Assembly: GCF_001194135.2 (NCBI RefSeq)
Contig: NC_069000.1
Span: forward strand, 43,212,396 to 43,246,525
DNA: 34,130 nt
Origin: Octopus bimaculoides
Lineage: Eukaryota
Direction: 5' to 3'
A program made the position numbers and the translations under genes. Of the stretch, positions 12,670-23,514 are shown one piece after another. Below the pieces are notes generated by a model, which saw only the letters and a list, made by a program, of their open reading frames with translations, made no database searches and was not told the DNA's origin. Within the stretch, counting starts at the first letter, position 1. The number at the start of each line of letters is the position of its first letter.

Positions 12670-13170
12670 GTGTTAATGTTTTCCATCAATAAAACATTTG
12701 ACTCATTAAATTAATTTTGTATGTGGTTGAATATCTCGCAGACAAGTGCAATCTTCGGTCTTTTACTTGTTTCATTCATTAGACTGTGGTCATGCTTGGG
12801 AACCATCCTGAAGAGTTTTTAGCAGAACTAATTGATCCCCAATTGTCCAGGAGGTGGAGTGGCGGACAAACAAAGACACAAGGACACAGACACGTGCATA
12901 CGCTCCACCCCGATAGGCTTCTTATAGTTTCCGTTTACCGAATTCATTGACAAGGCTTGGGTAACTTGATGCGATAGAAGAAGGCATTTGCCCGAGTTGC
13001 CACGTAGTGGGACTGAACGCAGAACCTTGTGGTTGGGCAACAAAATTCTTACCACGTGTTCACGCTTGCGCCTGCGTTAAATTATCGTGCAAGTGGCTGA
13101 ATATCTCACAGACAAGCTTTCTCTAAAATCTAATTTTCAGTCGTAATACAACATGTGACAAGGCTAAACA
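12670..13170 (-). mobile_element. Old SINE family C fragment, interrupted by a family B SINE
   Basis: 12670-12746 and 13077-13170 align colinearly with the family C copy at 21650-21790 (aaattatcgtgcaagtggctgaatatctcacagac and tgtgacaaggct). Confidence 0.6.
12747..13076 (-). mobile_element. tRNA-derived SINE family B, near full length
   Basis: Minus strand begins gcaggcgcaagcgtgaacacgtggtaag...gcgttcagtcccactacgtggcaactcgggcaaatgccttc, matching the + copy at 26670. Its tail (ttttacttgtttcattcattagactgtggtcatgc on +) matches the fragment at 14305. Confidence 0.85.
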
Positions 13171-13362: not shown

Positions 13363-14304
13363 TTCTTACATCATGGATGTTCTAATAGATGGGAGTCATG
13401 GCTGGGTTTCATACTGATGGCAGTCATCAGAGAAATAACGAATAGACAAAGCTTACAAAAGTATATTGGATAAATGACCTATCGCAATATCTTCATTTCT
13501 AGAGATACAATAGTATCCAACGTTGTCGTTGACGTTTTGGTCATTCGTGTACTCAACCAAGGGTAATCGAAGGCTGAAGTTCATAATGAGAAAGGTTTCA
13601 CAGCACATCGTGCTTCCAAAATCCTTTTAGATGTGGACCCAAAGATTTAACCTAAACCAAGAAATCGTGAATCAGGCAACTTCGAAAGAGATGTCAAATG
13701 AATGTCTGGAATGCATGTTCCACAATTCATAAGACAGTTCTGGAAACACTAGGCAAGGCATTGCATGGCATGCATGAAAATAGATCTCAAATTGGAAGAG
13801 TAGATTAATTGTCACGTGATTTCTAGTATCCCTCGTCACCAATCTCGAAAGGAACAGAACCCGATTAAAACCGATCCTGTCTTAAATTGTCAATGTTTTG
13901 GACCAAAGTTAAAATATTCAAACGGTCTAAAAACGTGAGAGTCAATACTTTTGGAAATTATCCATTTCATCATTTTTACCAAAAATTTGTTATGATTTAG
14001 AATGGGAAGATTTCCTTCCTGTAATAATAACGCCATGAAGCCAGCTCCTATACCTGCAGTGATGAAAGCCTCAGATATGAATTGATATAAAAGAGGTCTC
14101 TTCACTGGAAATATCATTCACTAAAACGAAGCTGGTTAAAGTGTAGGATGCAAAATATTTGGGTCTACAGAAGCAACTGGCAGTTGTTTCAGGTTCTTCT
14201 AGGAAATAGACAGAAGTAGAAATCAATAGAAAATGTTATCGATTGGGAAGGAAACAGTTCGCTATCCTGAATTATGTTAAAACTCGGCTTCACGGCTCTG
14301 CCAC

Positions 14305-14500
14305 TATTCTGTTATTCTTTTACTTGTTTCAGTCATTTGACTGCGGCCATGCTGGAGCACCGCCTTCAGTCGAGCAAATCGACCCCAGGACTTACTCTTT
14401 GTAAGCCTAGTACTTACTCTATCGGTCTCTTTTGCCGAACTGCTAAGTTACGGTGACGTAAACACACCAGCAGCGGTTGTCAAACGTTGTTGGGGGGGGG
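14305..14500 (-). mobile_element. SINE family B 3' half
   Basis: ttttacttgtttcagtcatttgactgcggccatgctggagcaccgcc...gaccccag is homologous to 12760-12840. Confidence 0.8.
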
Positions 14501-14558
14501 ACAGACGTAAACGCACAAAGATATGCGCGCGCACACACACAGATATATATATATATAA

Positions 14559-14590
14559 ACATTATTTACATTATTTACATTATTTACATT
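14559..14590. repeat. 9-bp tandem repeat (ACATTATTT)3.5, forming the 3' tail of the hammerhead-bearing element
   Basis: acattattt acattattt acattattt acatt read directly. Confidence 0.9.
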
Positions 14591-14624
14591 TTGACGGATA
14601 TTTGTCCTCATCGTGTTTGTTGCT

Positions 14625-14670
14625 AACACAACGTTTCGGCTGATATACCCTCCAGCCTTCATCAGGTGCT
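14625..14670 (-). ncRNA. Minimal type I hammerhead ribozyme (Penelope-like-element type)
   Basis: Minus strand AGCAC-CUGAUGA-A-GGCUG-GAGGGUAUAU-CAGCC-GAAA-CGUU-GUGUU. It has both core boxes, a 5-bp stem II closed by G-C, a palindromic ACGU in place of stem III, a GUU cleavage triplet, and a 5-bp stem I (AGCAC/GUGUU, one G-U). Confidence 0.85.
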
Positions 14671-15243
14671 TTTCCTAAGTAGGCAATTTGGCCTTGTGAA
14701 AGCCCATTTTTATTACAGGGCCTTGGTAGTTCATACTTGTCTGGCTTTTGTCCTTTGATATCTCCAGCATGGAAGGGCCGCATAAGAAGCTTGAATTCCA
14801 CGAACATAGATGTAATGGGGTCATTGCGACACACAAATAACCACATCGCAACGAGAATTGAGTTTTCTGGTGGATACCAGCACAAGGCCATAACTCATCG
14901 CCAGCAAACTGGAGTGTAGCAGTGTAGCAATGCGAAATAAAATGCCGTTATCAAGGAAATAACTCAGCAGTGAGTCCAGAGATTCAACTCCGCACATTTC
15001 ATTCACTAAATCAGGCGCCTTCAAAAGATGACAATATATTATCTGCAACGATTGTTACAACAGGGATTAAAATGTTTCACATTTACTTAATGTGTCTAGT
15101 TAATGCACTTGACGAAGATATATGCGATTTACACGCGCACCGCACACACACACACGCACATTCACGGATAAGCACATTTGTATGCATACATATATTTCGT
15201 ATATGTACATAGACATATTCATTTGAACACACACTGGCACACA

Positions 15244-15860
15244 TACAGGGTACGTCAGTTTTTCGAGGTCATTTGTTTTCATTTAGAAAAGACGCAGTTA
15301 TCATCAAAGAAAAGTTGTATTCGTAAACAAATTGATGCAAACAATTTTGAGAATCCTTTTATTGCACAAATGCAATAAATCCACGATTAGTATAAATCAC
15401 TGCTTGAATACAGAATCGGAAGTGTTGACATGTTCGAATCAAATGTTCTTTATCAAATTTGGATAAAGTGCTGGTTATTGTAGACTTGGGAGATTGTATG
15501 GTGTTTTTTTACTTCTCTCTCGACTTCACTAAATATAGAATACTTAAATGGATTGAGGGCTGGTCAAATGGGAGACCATGTGTCTGGGAGAAGAGGAGGG
15601 GGCACGTATCCACGCTTGGGTTGTCTTAGCCTTATGAATCTGAATCGGTTAAGAGTTTTATTGTAAGATGTTTGGTCTTTCGTTGCATACTCTGTCTATC
15701 CATTGCCTCACAACTTCTTCTAATACCTCTATGTAGACAATGGCATTGGCTCTTACAGTCTGTACAAAAAAGTGTGGGAGAATCTTCCTCAGAACTGACG
15801 ACTCCTAGAAACCTCACAGTTGCTGGGCTTTTAGTATGCATCACTATTGTTCCTAAGGAG
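15244..15860 (-). mobile_element. Tc1/mariner (maT/DD37D-like) transposase pseudogene with one terminal inverted repeat
   Basis: Across frameshifts the minus strand reads MHTKSPATVRFLGVVSSE / LPHFFVQTVRANAIVYIEVLEEVVRQWIDRVCNERPNILQ*NS / HKAKTTQAW / WSPI*PALNPFKYSIFSEVERE / FDKEHLIRTCQHFRFCIQAVI, ending at the stop at 15359-15361. The terminus TA+CAGGGTACGTCAG lies at 15244-15258. The catalytic Asp positions are mutated, so the subfamily call rests on flanking motifs. Confidence 0.85.
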
Positions 15861-21616: not shown

Positions 21617-21980
21617 TTGTTGGCACTCCGTCGCTTACGACGTCGAGGGTTCCAGTTGATCCGATCAACGGAACAGCCTGCTCGTGAAATTAACGGGCAA
21701 GTGGATGAGCACTCCACAGACACGTGTACCCTTAACGTAGTTCTCGGGGATATTCAGCGTGACACAGTGTGACAAGGCTGACCCTTTGAATTACAGGCAC
21801 AACAGAAACAGGAAGTAAGAATGAGAGAAAGTTGTGGTGGAAGAGTACAGCAGGGTTCGCCACCATCCCCTGCCGGAGCCTTGTGGAGCTTTAGGTGTTT
21901 TCGCTCAATAAACACTCACAAAACCGAGATCCTATGACCACGAGTCCGCTGCCCTAACCACTGGGCCATTGCGCCTCTAC

Positions 21981-21981
<1 letters not shown>
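21617..21981 (-). mobile_element. tRNA-derived SINE family C (possibly the octopus OR type), near full length, B box deleted
   Basis: Minus strand head tgtagaggcgcaatggcccagtggttagggcagcggactcg (A box TGGCCCAGTGG) and tail gtcgtaagcgacggagtgccaacaa. Flanked by the direct repeat ATTTATATAT (21605-21614 / 21981-21990; low complexity). The family name is from memory. Confidence 0.9.
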
Positions 21982-22026
<45 letters not shown>

Positions 22027-22099
22027 ATAAAGAAGTTCTAAGCTTTGCATAAAAATATAAATGGTAGGGACAATGCTTTCGTCTAAAATCCTTGAAGGT

Positions 22100-22262
22100 G
22101 AGATTAAGTCAATTACCTCAGCTGGTACTTATTTTATCGATCACGTAAGGGGCGAAAGGCTAAGTCGACCTCAGCGGGTTTCGAACTCAGAACATAAAGA
22201 CGGATGAAATGCCGCTAAGCATCTTACCCGGCGTATAAACGGTTCTACCATTTAGCTGCCTT
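22100..22262 (-). mobile_element. SINE family A
   Basis: Minus strand aaggcagctaaatggtagaaccg...gagttcgaaacccgctgaggtcgacttagcctttcg with A and B boxes. Confidence 0.85.
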
Positions 22263-22731: not shown

Positions 22732-23320
22732 TCATCTTCATGAAAATAATAGGAATAATAATAATAACAATAATAACAATGAGGAGATTATGAGCGAACT
22801 CCGGGGCCACAACGCCGTATGGCATGAAACGTTTTGAAGAATGAGAAAATATTCATTAAATCCACGGAAATTTCCGAAGTTATATCTTCAAATTGATAGA
22901 ATTCCTGTTATTGTCAAAGACTGAATAGAGAGGTTGCAAAGTAAAAGATATGAAGCACTAAGACAGGAATCAGATTTTAAGAAGTCCTCAACTGAATGGT
23001 TAGGAATACTAGGTTTCTAATCAAAGCAGACGTAACACCAATACTGTATGTCCTCTAGGCAAAGTCTCTCAAAGAACACGGTAGACAAATGCCAAACTAA
23101 ATTATCGAGACAGGTGATATATAAACGGTAGCAGGAGATTTATTAAAGGAATGTCTAATCAAAAGCCGGATGAAAACACATTAGAACAGAAAGGGCTAAA
23201 ATCTGTTTTATAGGACAAGAGCAACAGCAGCTGTTTCCGAAGAATTTTTTCGATCTACGGATCTGAAGGTTACGTCCTCCGAGGAATATGTCACTTCATC
23301 AGTTTTATACAAGATTTATT

Positions 23321-23391
23321 GTGGAGGCGCAATGGCCCAGTGGTTAGGACAGCAAACTCGCGGTCATAGCGACGGAGTGCCAACAAACAAC
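23321..23391 (+). mobile_element. Mini-SINE: family C head fused directly to family C tail, with a 12-bp TSD
   Basis: gtggaggcgcaatggcccagtggttaggacagcaaactcgcggtcatag|cgacggagtgccaacaaacaac, flanked by ACAAGATTTATT (23309-23320) and ACAAAATTTATT (23392-23403). Confidence 0.85.
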
Positions 23392-23514
23392 ACAAAATTT
23401 ATTATATATTGGAGGAGTATTGCATAAAATAACTTGTCCTATTTCTTGCGCCACCCCGCTCCCTAATGTCGAAAATTGTCGAAGTCAGCCATGTTATGAA
23501 TAATTTAGGGGCAA

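What the first reader, a model, noticed from the sequence alone, without database searches (positions are those of the whole stretch)
14625..14670. Minimal hammerhead ribozyme with a complete core on the minus strand
Seen: minus strand 5'-AGCAC CUGAUGA A GGCUG[GAGGGUAUAU]CAGCC GAAA CGUU^GUGUU. All core residues are present and stems I and II pair. The predicted cut is after GUU, between + coordinates 14630 and 14629. Known: Penelope-like retroelements carry minimal type I hammerheads whose stem III is reduced to a palindrome such as ACGU and which cleave as dimers. An extra base between A9 and G10.1 is tolerated in the chrysanthemum chlorotic mottle viroid hammerhead. Inference: this copy may still self-cleave. 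With only one complete copy here, it would need a partner in trans, so transcripts crossing this site on the minus strand could be cut by pairing with RNAs from sister copies. The motif class is known; I cannot tell whether this family has been described.
Basis: partly seen in the sequence, partly recalled or inferred. Interest (0 to 1): 0.85.

Follow-up and report, generated by a model that had tools for sequence, protein, structure and literature searches.

The report
Relic Penelope-type minimal hammerhead ribozyme motif
The motif is real: a single, sequence-intact copy of the minimal hammerhead ribozyme that Penelope-like retrotransposons carry near their 3' ends, most likely a leftover of an old insertion and so an ordinary, already described kind of element.

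Summary
Minus strand 14670-14625 reads AGCAC-CUGAUGA-A-GGCUG(G)-loop-(U)CAGCC-GAAA-CGU-U^GUGUU, with the predicted cut between 14630 and 14629.

A generic min-HHR descriptor finds only this site in the window. About 1-2.5e-4 hits per window are expected by chance.

I built a covariance model from seven hammerheads that lie just 3' of Penelope-like (PLE) RT-EN ORFs. Those loci were chosen through protein homology alone. The model hits exactly this site at 40 bits (E about 1e-9); the next-best hit in the window scores 10.7 bits.

The motif shows every published hallmark of metazoan PLE min-HHRs:
- no helix III
- an ACGU palindrome
- an unpaired base after A9
- a G10.1-C11.1 pair
- a 5-bp stem I

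Rfam finds nothing, but it also misses bona fide PLE min-HHRs, so that negative is uninformative.

The PLE context is not shown here. No RT or EN remnant is detectable nearby. The one partly related contig lacks the motif. Genome-wide copies could not be examined.

Self-cleavage, and especially trans-cleavage of host transcripts, is unsupported. Published monomers are inactive, a 4-bp trans helix III is weak, and a local 9-bp hairpin competes with stem I.

Verdict: a new member of a known kind, of low interest.

The parts
14625..14670 (-). Complete minimal (helix III-less) type I hammerhead motif: stem I / CUGAUGA / bulged A / stem II hairpin / GAAA / CGU / U17 / stem I'
   Evidence: Sequence read. 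It is the only descriptor hit in the window. CM R1 scores it at 40 bits, E about 1e-9.
14666..14670 (-). Stem I 5' strand AGCAC (positions 2.5-2.1)
   Evidence: Pairs with GUGUU at 14629-14625 (A-U, G-U, C-G, A-U, C-G). All pairs are standard in the CM alignment.
14659..14665 (-). Core box C3-A9, CUGAUGA. Its AUG (14662-14660) also opens a meaningless 60-aa ORF that runs into the microsatellite.
   Evidence: ORF 14480..14662 on the minus strand.
14658..14658 (-). Unpaired A between A9 and G10.1
   Evidence: This is a hallmark of metazoan PLE min-HHRs (PMC4209133). A one-base bulge is present in all 8 min-HHRs found beside independently chosen PLE ORFs; it is A in 5 of them.
14638..14657 (-). 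Helix II hairpin GGCUG(G)-AGGGUAUA-(U)CAGCC, with a G10.1-C11.1 closing pair
   Evidence: The hairpin forms in the predicted fold of the isolated motif.
14630..14637 (-). GAAA (G12-A15.1), then C15.2-G16.2-U16.1 (palindrome ACGU, no loop 3), then U17. The predicted scissile bond is 3' of U17, between 14630 and 14629.
   Evidence: The same GAAA-CGU-H arrangement occurs in 7 of the 8 independent PLE-linked min-HHRs.
14625..14629 (-). Stem I 3' strand GUGUU (positions 1.1-1.5)
14609..14633 (-). Competing 9-bp hairpin CGUUGUGUU / AACACGAUG. It would sequester the stem I 3' strand and the cleavage site.
   Evidence: Minimum-free-energy folds of the 86- and 96-nt contexts.
14688..14769 (-). Old interspersed repeat segment just upstream of the motif. 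It is the only flank with a relative elsewhere (Logan contig L001, 71% identity over 83 nt). Its class is unknown.
   Evidence: Local alignment beats all 1000 shuffles for 14900-14690 but not for the part that holds the HHR.
14520..14592 (-). Microsatellite block (UGUAAAUAA)x3-(UA)n-(UG)n, starting about 35 nt 3' of the motif. It is a possible insertion target or boundary.
   Evidence: PLEs are reported to prefer microsatellite targets (PMC8557442).
14310..14520 (-). 3' part of a SINE that is also present at 12750-13075(-). The SINE homology begins only at the microsatellite, so the hammerhead is not part of the SINE.
   Evidence: Repeat family D17 and alignment A2.

Best explanation
This is a solitary, sequence-intact copy of the 'min-HHR', the helix III-less type I hammerhead that Penelope-like retroelements (PLEs) carry in their pseudo-LTR, just 3' of the RT-EN ORF. 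It was most likely deposited as part of a PLE-derived insertion. That insertion was either a 5'-truncated PLE 3' end or a non-autonomous pLTR derivative. It sits in microsatellite-rich, repeat-dense intergenic or intronic DNA of what looks like an octopus genome (the organism is my recognition, not a tool result).

In an active PLE, two such motifs are thought to pair through the ACGU palindrome to form a double hammerhead, helped by the element's own protein, and to cut after position 17. Here there is one copy, no partner within 34 kb and no nearby PLE gene. I therefore read it as a molecular fossil with no function of its own. Its intact core is best explained by ascertainment: it is one intact copy among many decayed ones.

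Shown: the motif, its statistical significance, and its match to PLE-linked hammerheads. Inferred: its origin from a PLE insertion and its present inactivity.
For: 1. The motif is present and unique in the window. Chance expectation is about 1-2.5e-4 per window.
2. [quoted passage not shown]
3. I fetched ten PLE loci through protein homology only. In 8 of them a min-HHR of the same build overlaps or lies up to about 310 nt past the ORF stop on the coding strand. All 8 have a 1-nt bulge, 7 have G10.1-C11.1 (one has G-U), and 7 have GAAA-CGU-H.
4. CM R1, built from 7 of these, hits 14625-14670(-) at 40 bits, E about 1e-9.
5. The metagenome scan found min-HHRs with the identical CUGAUGA-A-GGCUG...CAGCC-GAAACGU halves. 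In L006, L013, L014, L015, L040, L046 and L049 they lie within about 150 nt 3' of PLE RT-EN ORFs; in L005 the motif is about 1.5 kb downstream of the ORF on the same strand.
6. Class-level covariation of stems I and II is strong: 94.7% of cells are paired against 66.9% in shuffles, and 8 of 10 pairs show double changes.
7. PLEs are a major, old TE order in octopus genomes, with a burst at about JC 0.2 (PMC13282606).
8. The published picture is that most min-HHRs are scattered single copies from truncated PLEs.
Against: - No RT or GIY-YIG remnant is detectable next to the motif or anywhere in the window. I tried tblastn with 120 PLE proteins, an EN-domain HMM and Pfam.
- The only partly homologous contig (L001) lacks CUGAUGA and shows no significant similarity across the motif. 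It is therefore unproven that the motif belongs to a repeat family.
- Significant homology to L001 stops just before the motif. The two pieces could therefore be of different origin.
- The organism and its PLE families could not be examined with the collections at hand.
Confidence: 0.8

Rival explanations
1. The motif belongs to an HHR-bearing non-autonomous element rather than to a truncated PLE. It could be a monomer of a metazoan non-LTR retrozyme or another small repeat that carries a hammerhead and is mobilised in trans by PLE machinery.
For: - There is no EN or RT remnant upstream.
- Animal retrozymes are reported to derive from PLE pLTRs and to occur partly as monomers (bioRxiv 10.64898/2026.07.22.740005).
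- An unclassified old repeat abuts the motif.
Against: - Published metazoan retrozymes carry canonical type I HHRs with a short helix III plus loop, and they occur in tandem arrays (PMC4209133, for the canonical metazoan HHR architecture; abstract of PMC7229834). Here there is no helix III loop, no tandem repeat and no second copy in 34 kb.
- The motif matches the ORF-linked min-HHR model at 40 bits.
Confidence: 0.1
2. The copy is functional. As the first reader suggested, it pairs through ACGU with RNAs from sister copies, or is helped by PLE protein, and cleaves minus-strand transcripts that cross 14630/14629.
For: - All core residues and both stems are intact.
- Dimeric min-HHR constructs do cleave weakly in vitro (PMC4209133).
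- The PAc HHR cleaves in the presence of its protein (PMC11167929).
Against: - Monomers are inactive and dimers are weak even at non-physiological Mg2+.
- No RNA-seq read ends were found at the PAc site, and cleavage was dispensable for insertion.
- The 4-bp trans helix is worth only about -3 kcal/mol.
- A native-context fold buries the site in a 9-bp hairpin.
- There is no evidence of transcription, of a partner copy, or of conservation.
Confidence: 0.04
3. It is a chance match to the hammerhead consensus in AT-rich, repeat-rich DNA.
For: - A relaxed descriptor is expected to hit about 10-25 times by chance in a genome of this size.
- There is no family or PLE context, and Rfam is silent.
Against: - The extras that the descriptor does not force (an A bulge, G10.1-C11.1, the ACGU palindrome, 5-6-bp stems) cut the chance expectation to roughly 0.002-0.02 per genome by my analytic estimate.
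- An independent CM gives 40 bits, E about 1e-9 for the window, against 10.7 bits for the runner-up.
- Rfam's silence is uninformative for this class.
Confidence: 0.04

Closest known systems
Metazoan PLE 'min-HHR' (Cervera & de la Pena 2014, Mol Biol Evol; PMC4209133)
   Same: - CUGAUGA/GAAA core
- no helix III or loop 3
- palindromic 15.2-16.2 (ACGU)
- an unpaired nucleotide between A9 and G10.1
- a G10.1-C11.1 pair
- a 5-bp open helix I
- occurrence as a scattered single copy

It also matches a CM built from PLE-linked examples.
   Different: No PLE ORF or recognisable pLTR lies next to it here. Helix II is 5-6 bp, against 7-8 bp in the Schistosoma families. A consensus family with covariation in the host genome has not been shown.
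Poseidon (PAc) hammerhead of Anolis carolinensis (Mob DNA 2024; PMC11167929)
   Same: It is a PLE hammerhead with stems I and II only. The AUG inside CUGAUGA can serve as a start codon, and here too an ORF opens at that AUG.
   Different: PAc is part of an active, expressed element, and its cleavage was shown to be protein-dependent. Here the 60-aa ORF runs into a microsatellite and has no PLE similarity.
Canonical metazoan type I hammerheads and non-LTR retrozymes (abstract of PMC7229834; architecture as described in PMC4209133; bioRxiv 10.64898/2026.07.22.740005)
   Same: Type I topology, dimer-dependent activity through a palindromic helix III, and a link to PLEs.
   Different: Those have a 1-2-bp helix III with a 2-4-nt loop, conserved loop 1-loop 2 contacts, and tandem genomic arrays that yield circRNAs. 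None of these is present here.
Hammerheads of viroids, satellite RNAs and satellite DNA that act as double hammerheads or carry an extra core nucleotide (ASBVd, newt satellite 2, CChMVd)
   Same: The same principle applies: an unstable helix III is rescued in a dimer. An extra base after A9 is tolerated (De la Pena & Flores 2001, as cited in PMC4209133; the CChMVd detail is from my own knowledge).
   Different: Those sit in replicating circular RNAs or tandem satellites with closed stems I and II and a real loop 3.
Rfam hammerhead families (my recollection of the names: Hammerhead_1, _3, _II, HH9, HH10)
   Same: The same catalytic core.
   Different: None of these models reports the site even at E up to 10 in an 86-nt search. 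They also miss genuine PLE min-HHRs. The min-HHR class is effectively not represented.

Membership tests
PLE min-HHR (Cervera & de la Pena 2014) | Conserved core C3-A9 (CUGANGA), G12-A14 plus A15.1 (GAAA), U16.1, and H at position 17 | tested here: met
   The site reads CUGAUGA ... GAAA-CGU-U.
PLE min-HHR (Cervera & de la Pena 2014) | No helix III or loop 3; positions 15.2-16.2 are palindromic, so that two copies can form a shared helix III | tested here: met
   A15.1-C-G-U16.1 gives ACGU with no loop. The same CGU is seen in 7 of 8 independent PLE-linked motifs.
PLE min-HHR (Cervera & de la Pena 2014) | An unpaired nucleotide between A9 and G10.1 | tested here: met
   A at 14658. A bulge is present in 8 of 8 independent PLE-linked motifs.
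PLE min-HHR (Cervera & de la Pena 2014) | G10.1-C11.1 closing pair and a helix II hairpin | tested here: met
   GGCUG(G)/(U)CAGCC, 5-6 bp with an 8-10-nt loop.
PLE min-HHR (Cervera & de la Pena 2014) | A short (4-5 bp) open helix I flanking the motif | tested here: met
   AGCAC/GUGUU, 5 bp including one G-U.
PLE min-HHR (Cervera & de la Pena 2014) | A match to a profile of sequence plus structure built from hammerheads physically linked to PLE ORFs | tested here: met
   CM R1 was built from 7 loci chosen by protein only. It gives 40.0 bits, E about 1e-9, over the full model length. This falls within the 26-47-bit range of the PLE-linked motifs that were not used to build the model; the seven training families score 51-62 bits.
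PLE min-HHR (Cervera & de la Pena 2014) | Location in a PLE pseudo-LTR, next to an RT / GIY-YIG ORF | tested here: not met
   No RT or EN similarity was found near the motif or anywhere in the window. Published data say most genomic copies are single motifs from truncated PLEs, so this does not exclude a PLE origin.
PLE min-HHR (Cervera & de la Pena 2014) | Membership of a genome-wide consensus family with covariation and compensatory changes | not testable with these tools
   The host genome is not in any searchable collection. One partly related Logan contig (L001) lacks the motif. Covariation was shown only at class level across other organisms.
PLE min-HHR (Cervera & de la Pena 2014) | Mg2+-dependent self-cleavage as a dimer or with PLE protein | not testable with these tools
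   Only folding predictions are available. The HHR-compatible fold lies within 0.7 kcal/mol of the minimum for the isolated 46-mer, but it is displaced by a 9-bp hairpin in context.
Rfam hammerhead families | A score at or above the family gathering threshold | tested here: not met
   No hammerhead hit at gathering or at E up to 10. As a control, four genuine PLE min-HHR loci also give no hammerhead hit.
Metazoan non-LTR retrozyme | Tandem head-to-tail repeats, each with a canonical type I HHR (short helix III plus loop, loop-loop contacts) | tested here: not met
   There is no second copy or tandem unit in 34 kb, and the motif has no loop 3.
HHR-bearing SINE (Schistosoma Sm-alpha type) | The hammerhead lies inside the SINE body | tested here: not met
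   The adjacent SINE's homology to its sister copy starts only at the microsatellite, 3' of the motif. ARAGORN finds no tRNA-like head.

The most novel reading that the evidence does not exclude
Solitary, sequence-intact min-HHR relics such as this one are not inert. With PLE protein or sister-copy RNAs supplied in trans, they would cut host transcripts that run through them, giving octopus genomes a dispersed, retroelement-derived layer of RNA processing.
Probability: 0.03. Interest if true: 0.7.

Novelty: new member of a known kind. Interest (0 to 1): 0.15.

Why it matters
It matters little on its own. The motif class, its link to Penelope-like elements and its weak, dimer- or protein-dependent activity were described in 2014-2024. 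One more scattered copy adds nothing conceptual.

There are two practical points:
- Rfam's hammerhead models do not see this class at all. Genome annotations will therefore miss thousands of such motifs, and a small dedicated covariance model, like the one built here from seven PLE-linked examples, recovers them cleanly.
- If the source is indeed a cephalopod, a genome-wide census with such a model would give a quick map of PLE 3' ends and of any copies lying inside transcribed genes.

Tried and rejected
1. **Rfam scans.** I ran the whole window at gathering, 701 nt at E up to 10, and 86 nt at E up to 10. There was no hammerhead hit. I rejected this as evidence against the motif after the control on true PLE min-HHRs also came back empty.

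2. **EN-remnant idea.** By eye, the frame reading 14678-14947(-), and 15040 onward, looked like a decayed GIY-YIG C-terminus ending just before the motif. Nothing supported this: Pfam, tblastn with 120 PLE proteins, an EN HMM against the six frames of the window and of L001, and BLASTP of P0003 against EN domains. Rejected.

3. **Sister copies through proteins.**
   - A k-mer search with the 103-aa ORF found nothing.
   - A full HMMER search with the 90-aa ORF gave two repeat-protein artefacts and one real relative, P0003.
   - The contig encoding P0003, L001, shares only about 80-200 nt upstream of the motif and lacks CUGAUGA.
   - The MAFFT picture of a '14-nt deletion' in L001 is not statistically supported.

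4. **Hammerhead as part of the neighbouring SINE.** Rejected on alignment A2.

5. **Second CUGAUGA...GAAAC hit at 13406-13430(-).** This is not a hammerhead. Three extra bases lie between stem II and GAAA, the descriptor does not report it, and the CM gives 9.9 bits.

6. **Supplementary files.** None are held for the two key PLE papers.

7. **Species behind SRR11869384.** A literature search found nothing.

8. **Mariner-like remnant at about 15360-15850(-).** I saw this by eye, but neither Pfam nor PDB sequences confirmed it.

Full report
**Observation.** The minus strand from 14670 to 14625 reads AGCAC CUGAUGA A GGCUGG AGGGUAUA UCAGCC GAAA CGU U GUGUU. U17 is base 14630 and G1.1 is base 14629, so the predicted scissile bond lies between them. 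Stem I has five pairs, one of them G-U. Stem II has five Watson-Crick pairs and can add a sixth as G-U around an 8-nt loop. All invariant core residues are present.

**Is it more than chance?** I wrote a relaxed min-HHR descriptor with these requirements:
- stem I of at least 4 bp
- CUGANGA
- 0-1 extra base
- stem II of at least 4 bp with a 3-20-nt loop
- GAAA
- a 15.2/16.2 pair
- U16.1 and H17

It finds exactly one site in the window, this one. In about 0.46 Gb of random sequence at each of two base compositions it hit once or twice. That is about 1-2.5e-4 expected per window, and about 10-25 chance hits in a 2.7-Gb genome. The relaxed motif alone would therefore not be conclusive if many windows were screened.

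The site also carries features that the descriptor does not force and that the literature lists as hallmarks: the extra base, here an A; G10.1-C11.1; a Watson-Crick 15.2-16.2 pair giving the palindrome ACGU; and 5-6-bp stems. By my analytic estimate these bring the chance expectation down to roughly 0.002-0.02 per whole genome.

**Rfam.** No hammerhead family is reported at gathering thresholds for the window. None is reported at E up to 10 for 701 nt or for 86 nt around the site. This is not evidence against the motif. Four loci with genuine PLE-linked min-HHRs also give no hammerhead hit at E up to 10.

**What the literature says.** Cervera & de la Pena 2014 (PMC4209133) defined the 'min-HHR' of metazoan Penelope-like elements. 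It has these properties:
- no helix III or loop 3
[quoted passage not shown] - a conserved G10.1-C11.1 pair
- palindromic 15.2-16.2 positions
- thousands of copies per genome, mostly as single scattered motifs 'probably related to truncated PLEs'
- no detectable cleavage as a monomer, and weak cleavage as dimers or trimers

Craig et al. 2021 (PMC8557442) place the HHR within the pLTRs, near the 3' ends of PLEs, and note a PLE insertion bias for microsatellites. For the Anolis Poseidon element (PMC11167929):
- the HHR overlaps the ORF start codon
- it cleaves only when PLE protein is added
- it is dispensable for insertion in vitro
- it leaves no RNA-seq ends at the cut site

The window motif fits every structural hallmark.

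**Independent test with real PLE loci.** I retrieved 120 PLE RT(-EN) proteins. The query was a PLE protein consensus written from memory; PLEs are retrotransposons, not viruses. I then fetched the DNA around ten of these proteins, chosen without reference to any hammerhead. In 8 of the 10 loci my descriptor finds a min-HHR on the coding strand, from overlapping the stop codon to about 310 nt past it. The mirror-image copy typical of PLE insertions often carries one too.
- All eight have a one-base bulge after A9: A in five, and C, G and T in one each.
- Seven have G10.1-C11.1; L071 has G-U.
- Seven have GAAA-CGU-H; one has GAAA-UAU-H.
- Stem I is 3-6 bp.

A covariance model (R1) built from seven of these families hits the window at exactly 14625-14670(-). 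The score is 40.0 bits, E about 1e-9, over the full model length with all ten pairs standard. The runner-up in the window scores 10.7 bits. Forty bits falls within the 26-47-bit range of the PLE-linked motifs that were not used to build the model; the seven training families themselves score 51-62 bits. On the 31 matches, 94.7% of pair cells are standard pairs against 66.9% in shuffles. Eight of ten pairs show changes on both sides. The covariation score is 0.71 against 0.20 in shuffles (0 of 500 reach it) and at most 0.12 for slid partners. Two caveats apply: the alignment is fitted to the model, and some rows were selected by a pattern that fixes stem II.

**Metagenome scan.** The pattern CTGATGA-N-GGCTG-N6-12-CAGCC-GAAACGT gave 66 loci. 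They fall into several unrelated hammerhead families. Four groups are min-HHRs with the same halves as the window motif, including the bulged A:
- L003, L005, L019, L054, L062 and L066
- L013 and L049
- L046
- L006, L014, L015, L033 and L040

In L006, L013, L014, L015, L040, L046 and L049, tblastn places a PLE RT-EN ORF on the same strand, ending within about 150 nt upstream of the motif. In L005 the ORF match ends about 1.5 kb upstream of the motif on the same strand. In L033 the motif precedes the ORF, as expected for a 5' pLTR.

**Local context.** The window is eukaryotic, microsatellite-rich, and 15% N in 11 gaps. From memory I recognise its SINEs as octopus SINEs; no tool confirmed the species.

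About 35 nt 3' of the motif, a (UGUAAAUAA)3-(UA)n-(UG)n block begins. It is followed by the 3' part of a SINE that also occurs at 12750-13075(-). The SINE homology starts only at the microsatellite, so the hammerhead is not part of the SINE.

Upstream, 14688-14769(-) is 71% identical to a Logan contig (L001), which I found through a spurious ORF. Local alignment beats all 1000 shuffles there, but not across the motif or further 5'. L001 has no CUGAUGA at the corresponding place.

No RT or GIY-YIG remnant is detectable near the motif or elsewhere in the window. My by-eye reading of an EN C-terminus ending at 14678 was not supported. The PLE origin of this particular copy is therefore inferred from the motif itself, not from its flanks. 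It could be a heavily 5'-truncated PLE end, a piece of pLTR, or a non-autonomous pLTR derivative. A 2026 preprint argues that animal retrozymes are such derivatives.

PLEs are a major and old TE order in octopus, with a burst at JC about 0.2 (PMC13282606; PMC8967140). That fits a decayed context.

**Likely activity.** The isolated 46-mer can adopt the stems I plus II fold within 0.7 kcal/mol of its minimum (-11.6 against -12.3 kcal/mol; z = -1.3). In 86-126-nt contexts the predicted minimum pairs CGUUGUGUU with AACACGAUG in a 9-bp hairpin. This removes the stem I 3' strand and the cleavage site. In the 96- and 126-nt contexts stem II is lost as well. An intermolecular ACGU/ACGU helix III is worth only about -3 kcal/mol.

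Taken with the published inactivity of monomers and the protein dependence of the Poseidon HHR, autonomous cleavage is unlikely. It is not excluded, and I give it about 3-4%. An intact core in an old copy is what ascertainment would produce when one intact motif is picked out of thousands of decayed ones.

**Verdict.** This is a genuine PLE-type minimal hammerhead motif, correctly read by the first stage. It belongs to a class described in 2014 and known to be massively abundant in invertebrate genomes. It is a new, unannotated member of a known kind, most likely a fossil. Interest is low. The one useful by-product is the finding that Rfam misses this class while a small dedicated model recovers it.

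Noticed in passing
L004, L016, L022, L024, L028, L030, L034, L036, L038, L043, L047, L048, L050, L064, L067 (JGI metagenome contigs; from the Ga01233xx and JGI24700 accession names I believe these are termite-gut samples, unverified): These contigs are densely populated with hammerheads on both strands, up to 4-5 per contig. The build is CUGAnGA-U-helix II-GAAA-CAUGU-H, that is, a 2-bp helix III with a 2-nt loop forming the palindrome ACAUGU. Stems I and II covary richly. No PLE ORF was detected on them with my protein set.
   Followed up: partly
L012, L017, L027, L031, L041, L045, L052, L059: These are hammerheads that look bacterial or phage-derived, with a long helix III hairpin, followed by a Shine-Dalgarno-like GGAG and an ATG. 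They also carry an extra U after A9. In L017, L041 and L045, helix II plus loop 2 (GGCUGGAGGGAUACCAGCC) is almost identical to that of the window motif (GGCUGGAGGGUAUAUCAGCC). This is probably coincidence, but it is unexplained.
   Followed up: partly
window 14480-14662 (-): The AUG inside CUGAUGA opens a 60-aa ORF (MKAGGYISRNVV...). The Anolis Poseidon element has its ORF start codon in the HHR in the same way. Here the ORF runs straight into the microsatellite and has no known similarity.
   Followed up: partly
L073 4115-4159; also L068, L069, L073, L075: In L073 the called PLE ORF ends at the UGA inside the hammerhead's CUGAUGA, so the ORF end and the ribozyme overlap. Several PLE loci show the head-to-head inverted pair of copies described for PLE insertions, each with its own min-HHR.
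   Followed up: partly
window about 15360-15850 (-): By eye, two reading frames look like the C-terminal half of a mariner/Tc1-type transposase (..VYIEVLEEVV..W.....AKKTQAW....ACQHFR....AVI...GGFI). Neither Pfam nor PDB sequences confirmed it.
   Followed up: partly
window 29834-30058 (+), and the overlapping ORF at 29800-30237 (-): The translation ..KIVPIIVGSLGTVSEGIKRNIREIGIECPVELLQKVSLLGTARIIRKVL resembles, from memory, the conserved C-terminal tail of invertebrate LINE ORF2 proteins. Not tested.
   Followed up: no
window 21919-22128 (-) and 23200-23424 (+): Two copies of a repeat translate to ..GAMAQWLGQ(Q/R)TRGH... From memory this is the tRNA-like head of a second SINE family; ARAGORN calls no tRNA. 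The copy at 23281-23364 gives a weak spurious tblastn hit to the 'YIGQT.R' part of GIY-YIG.
   Followed up: partly
window, whole: There are eleven runs of N totalling 5128 bases (15%). Most are flanked by (TA)n or (TG)n microsatellites, which is typical of a short-read draft assembly. They produce artefactual 'inverted repeats' of N in the repeat finder.
   Followed up: yes
L069 4384-4577: A roughly 190-nt perfect-looking hairpin, about 110 nt 3' of the PLE min-HHR, scores 80 bits on both strands against the plant miRNA precursor models MIR1437 and MIR1858. This is below their gathering thresholds. It is probably a MITE-like inverted repeat.
   Followed up: no
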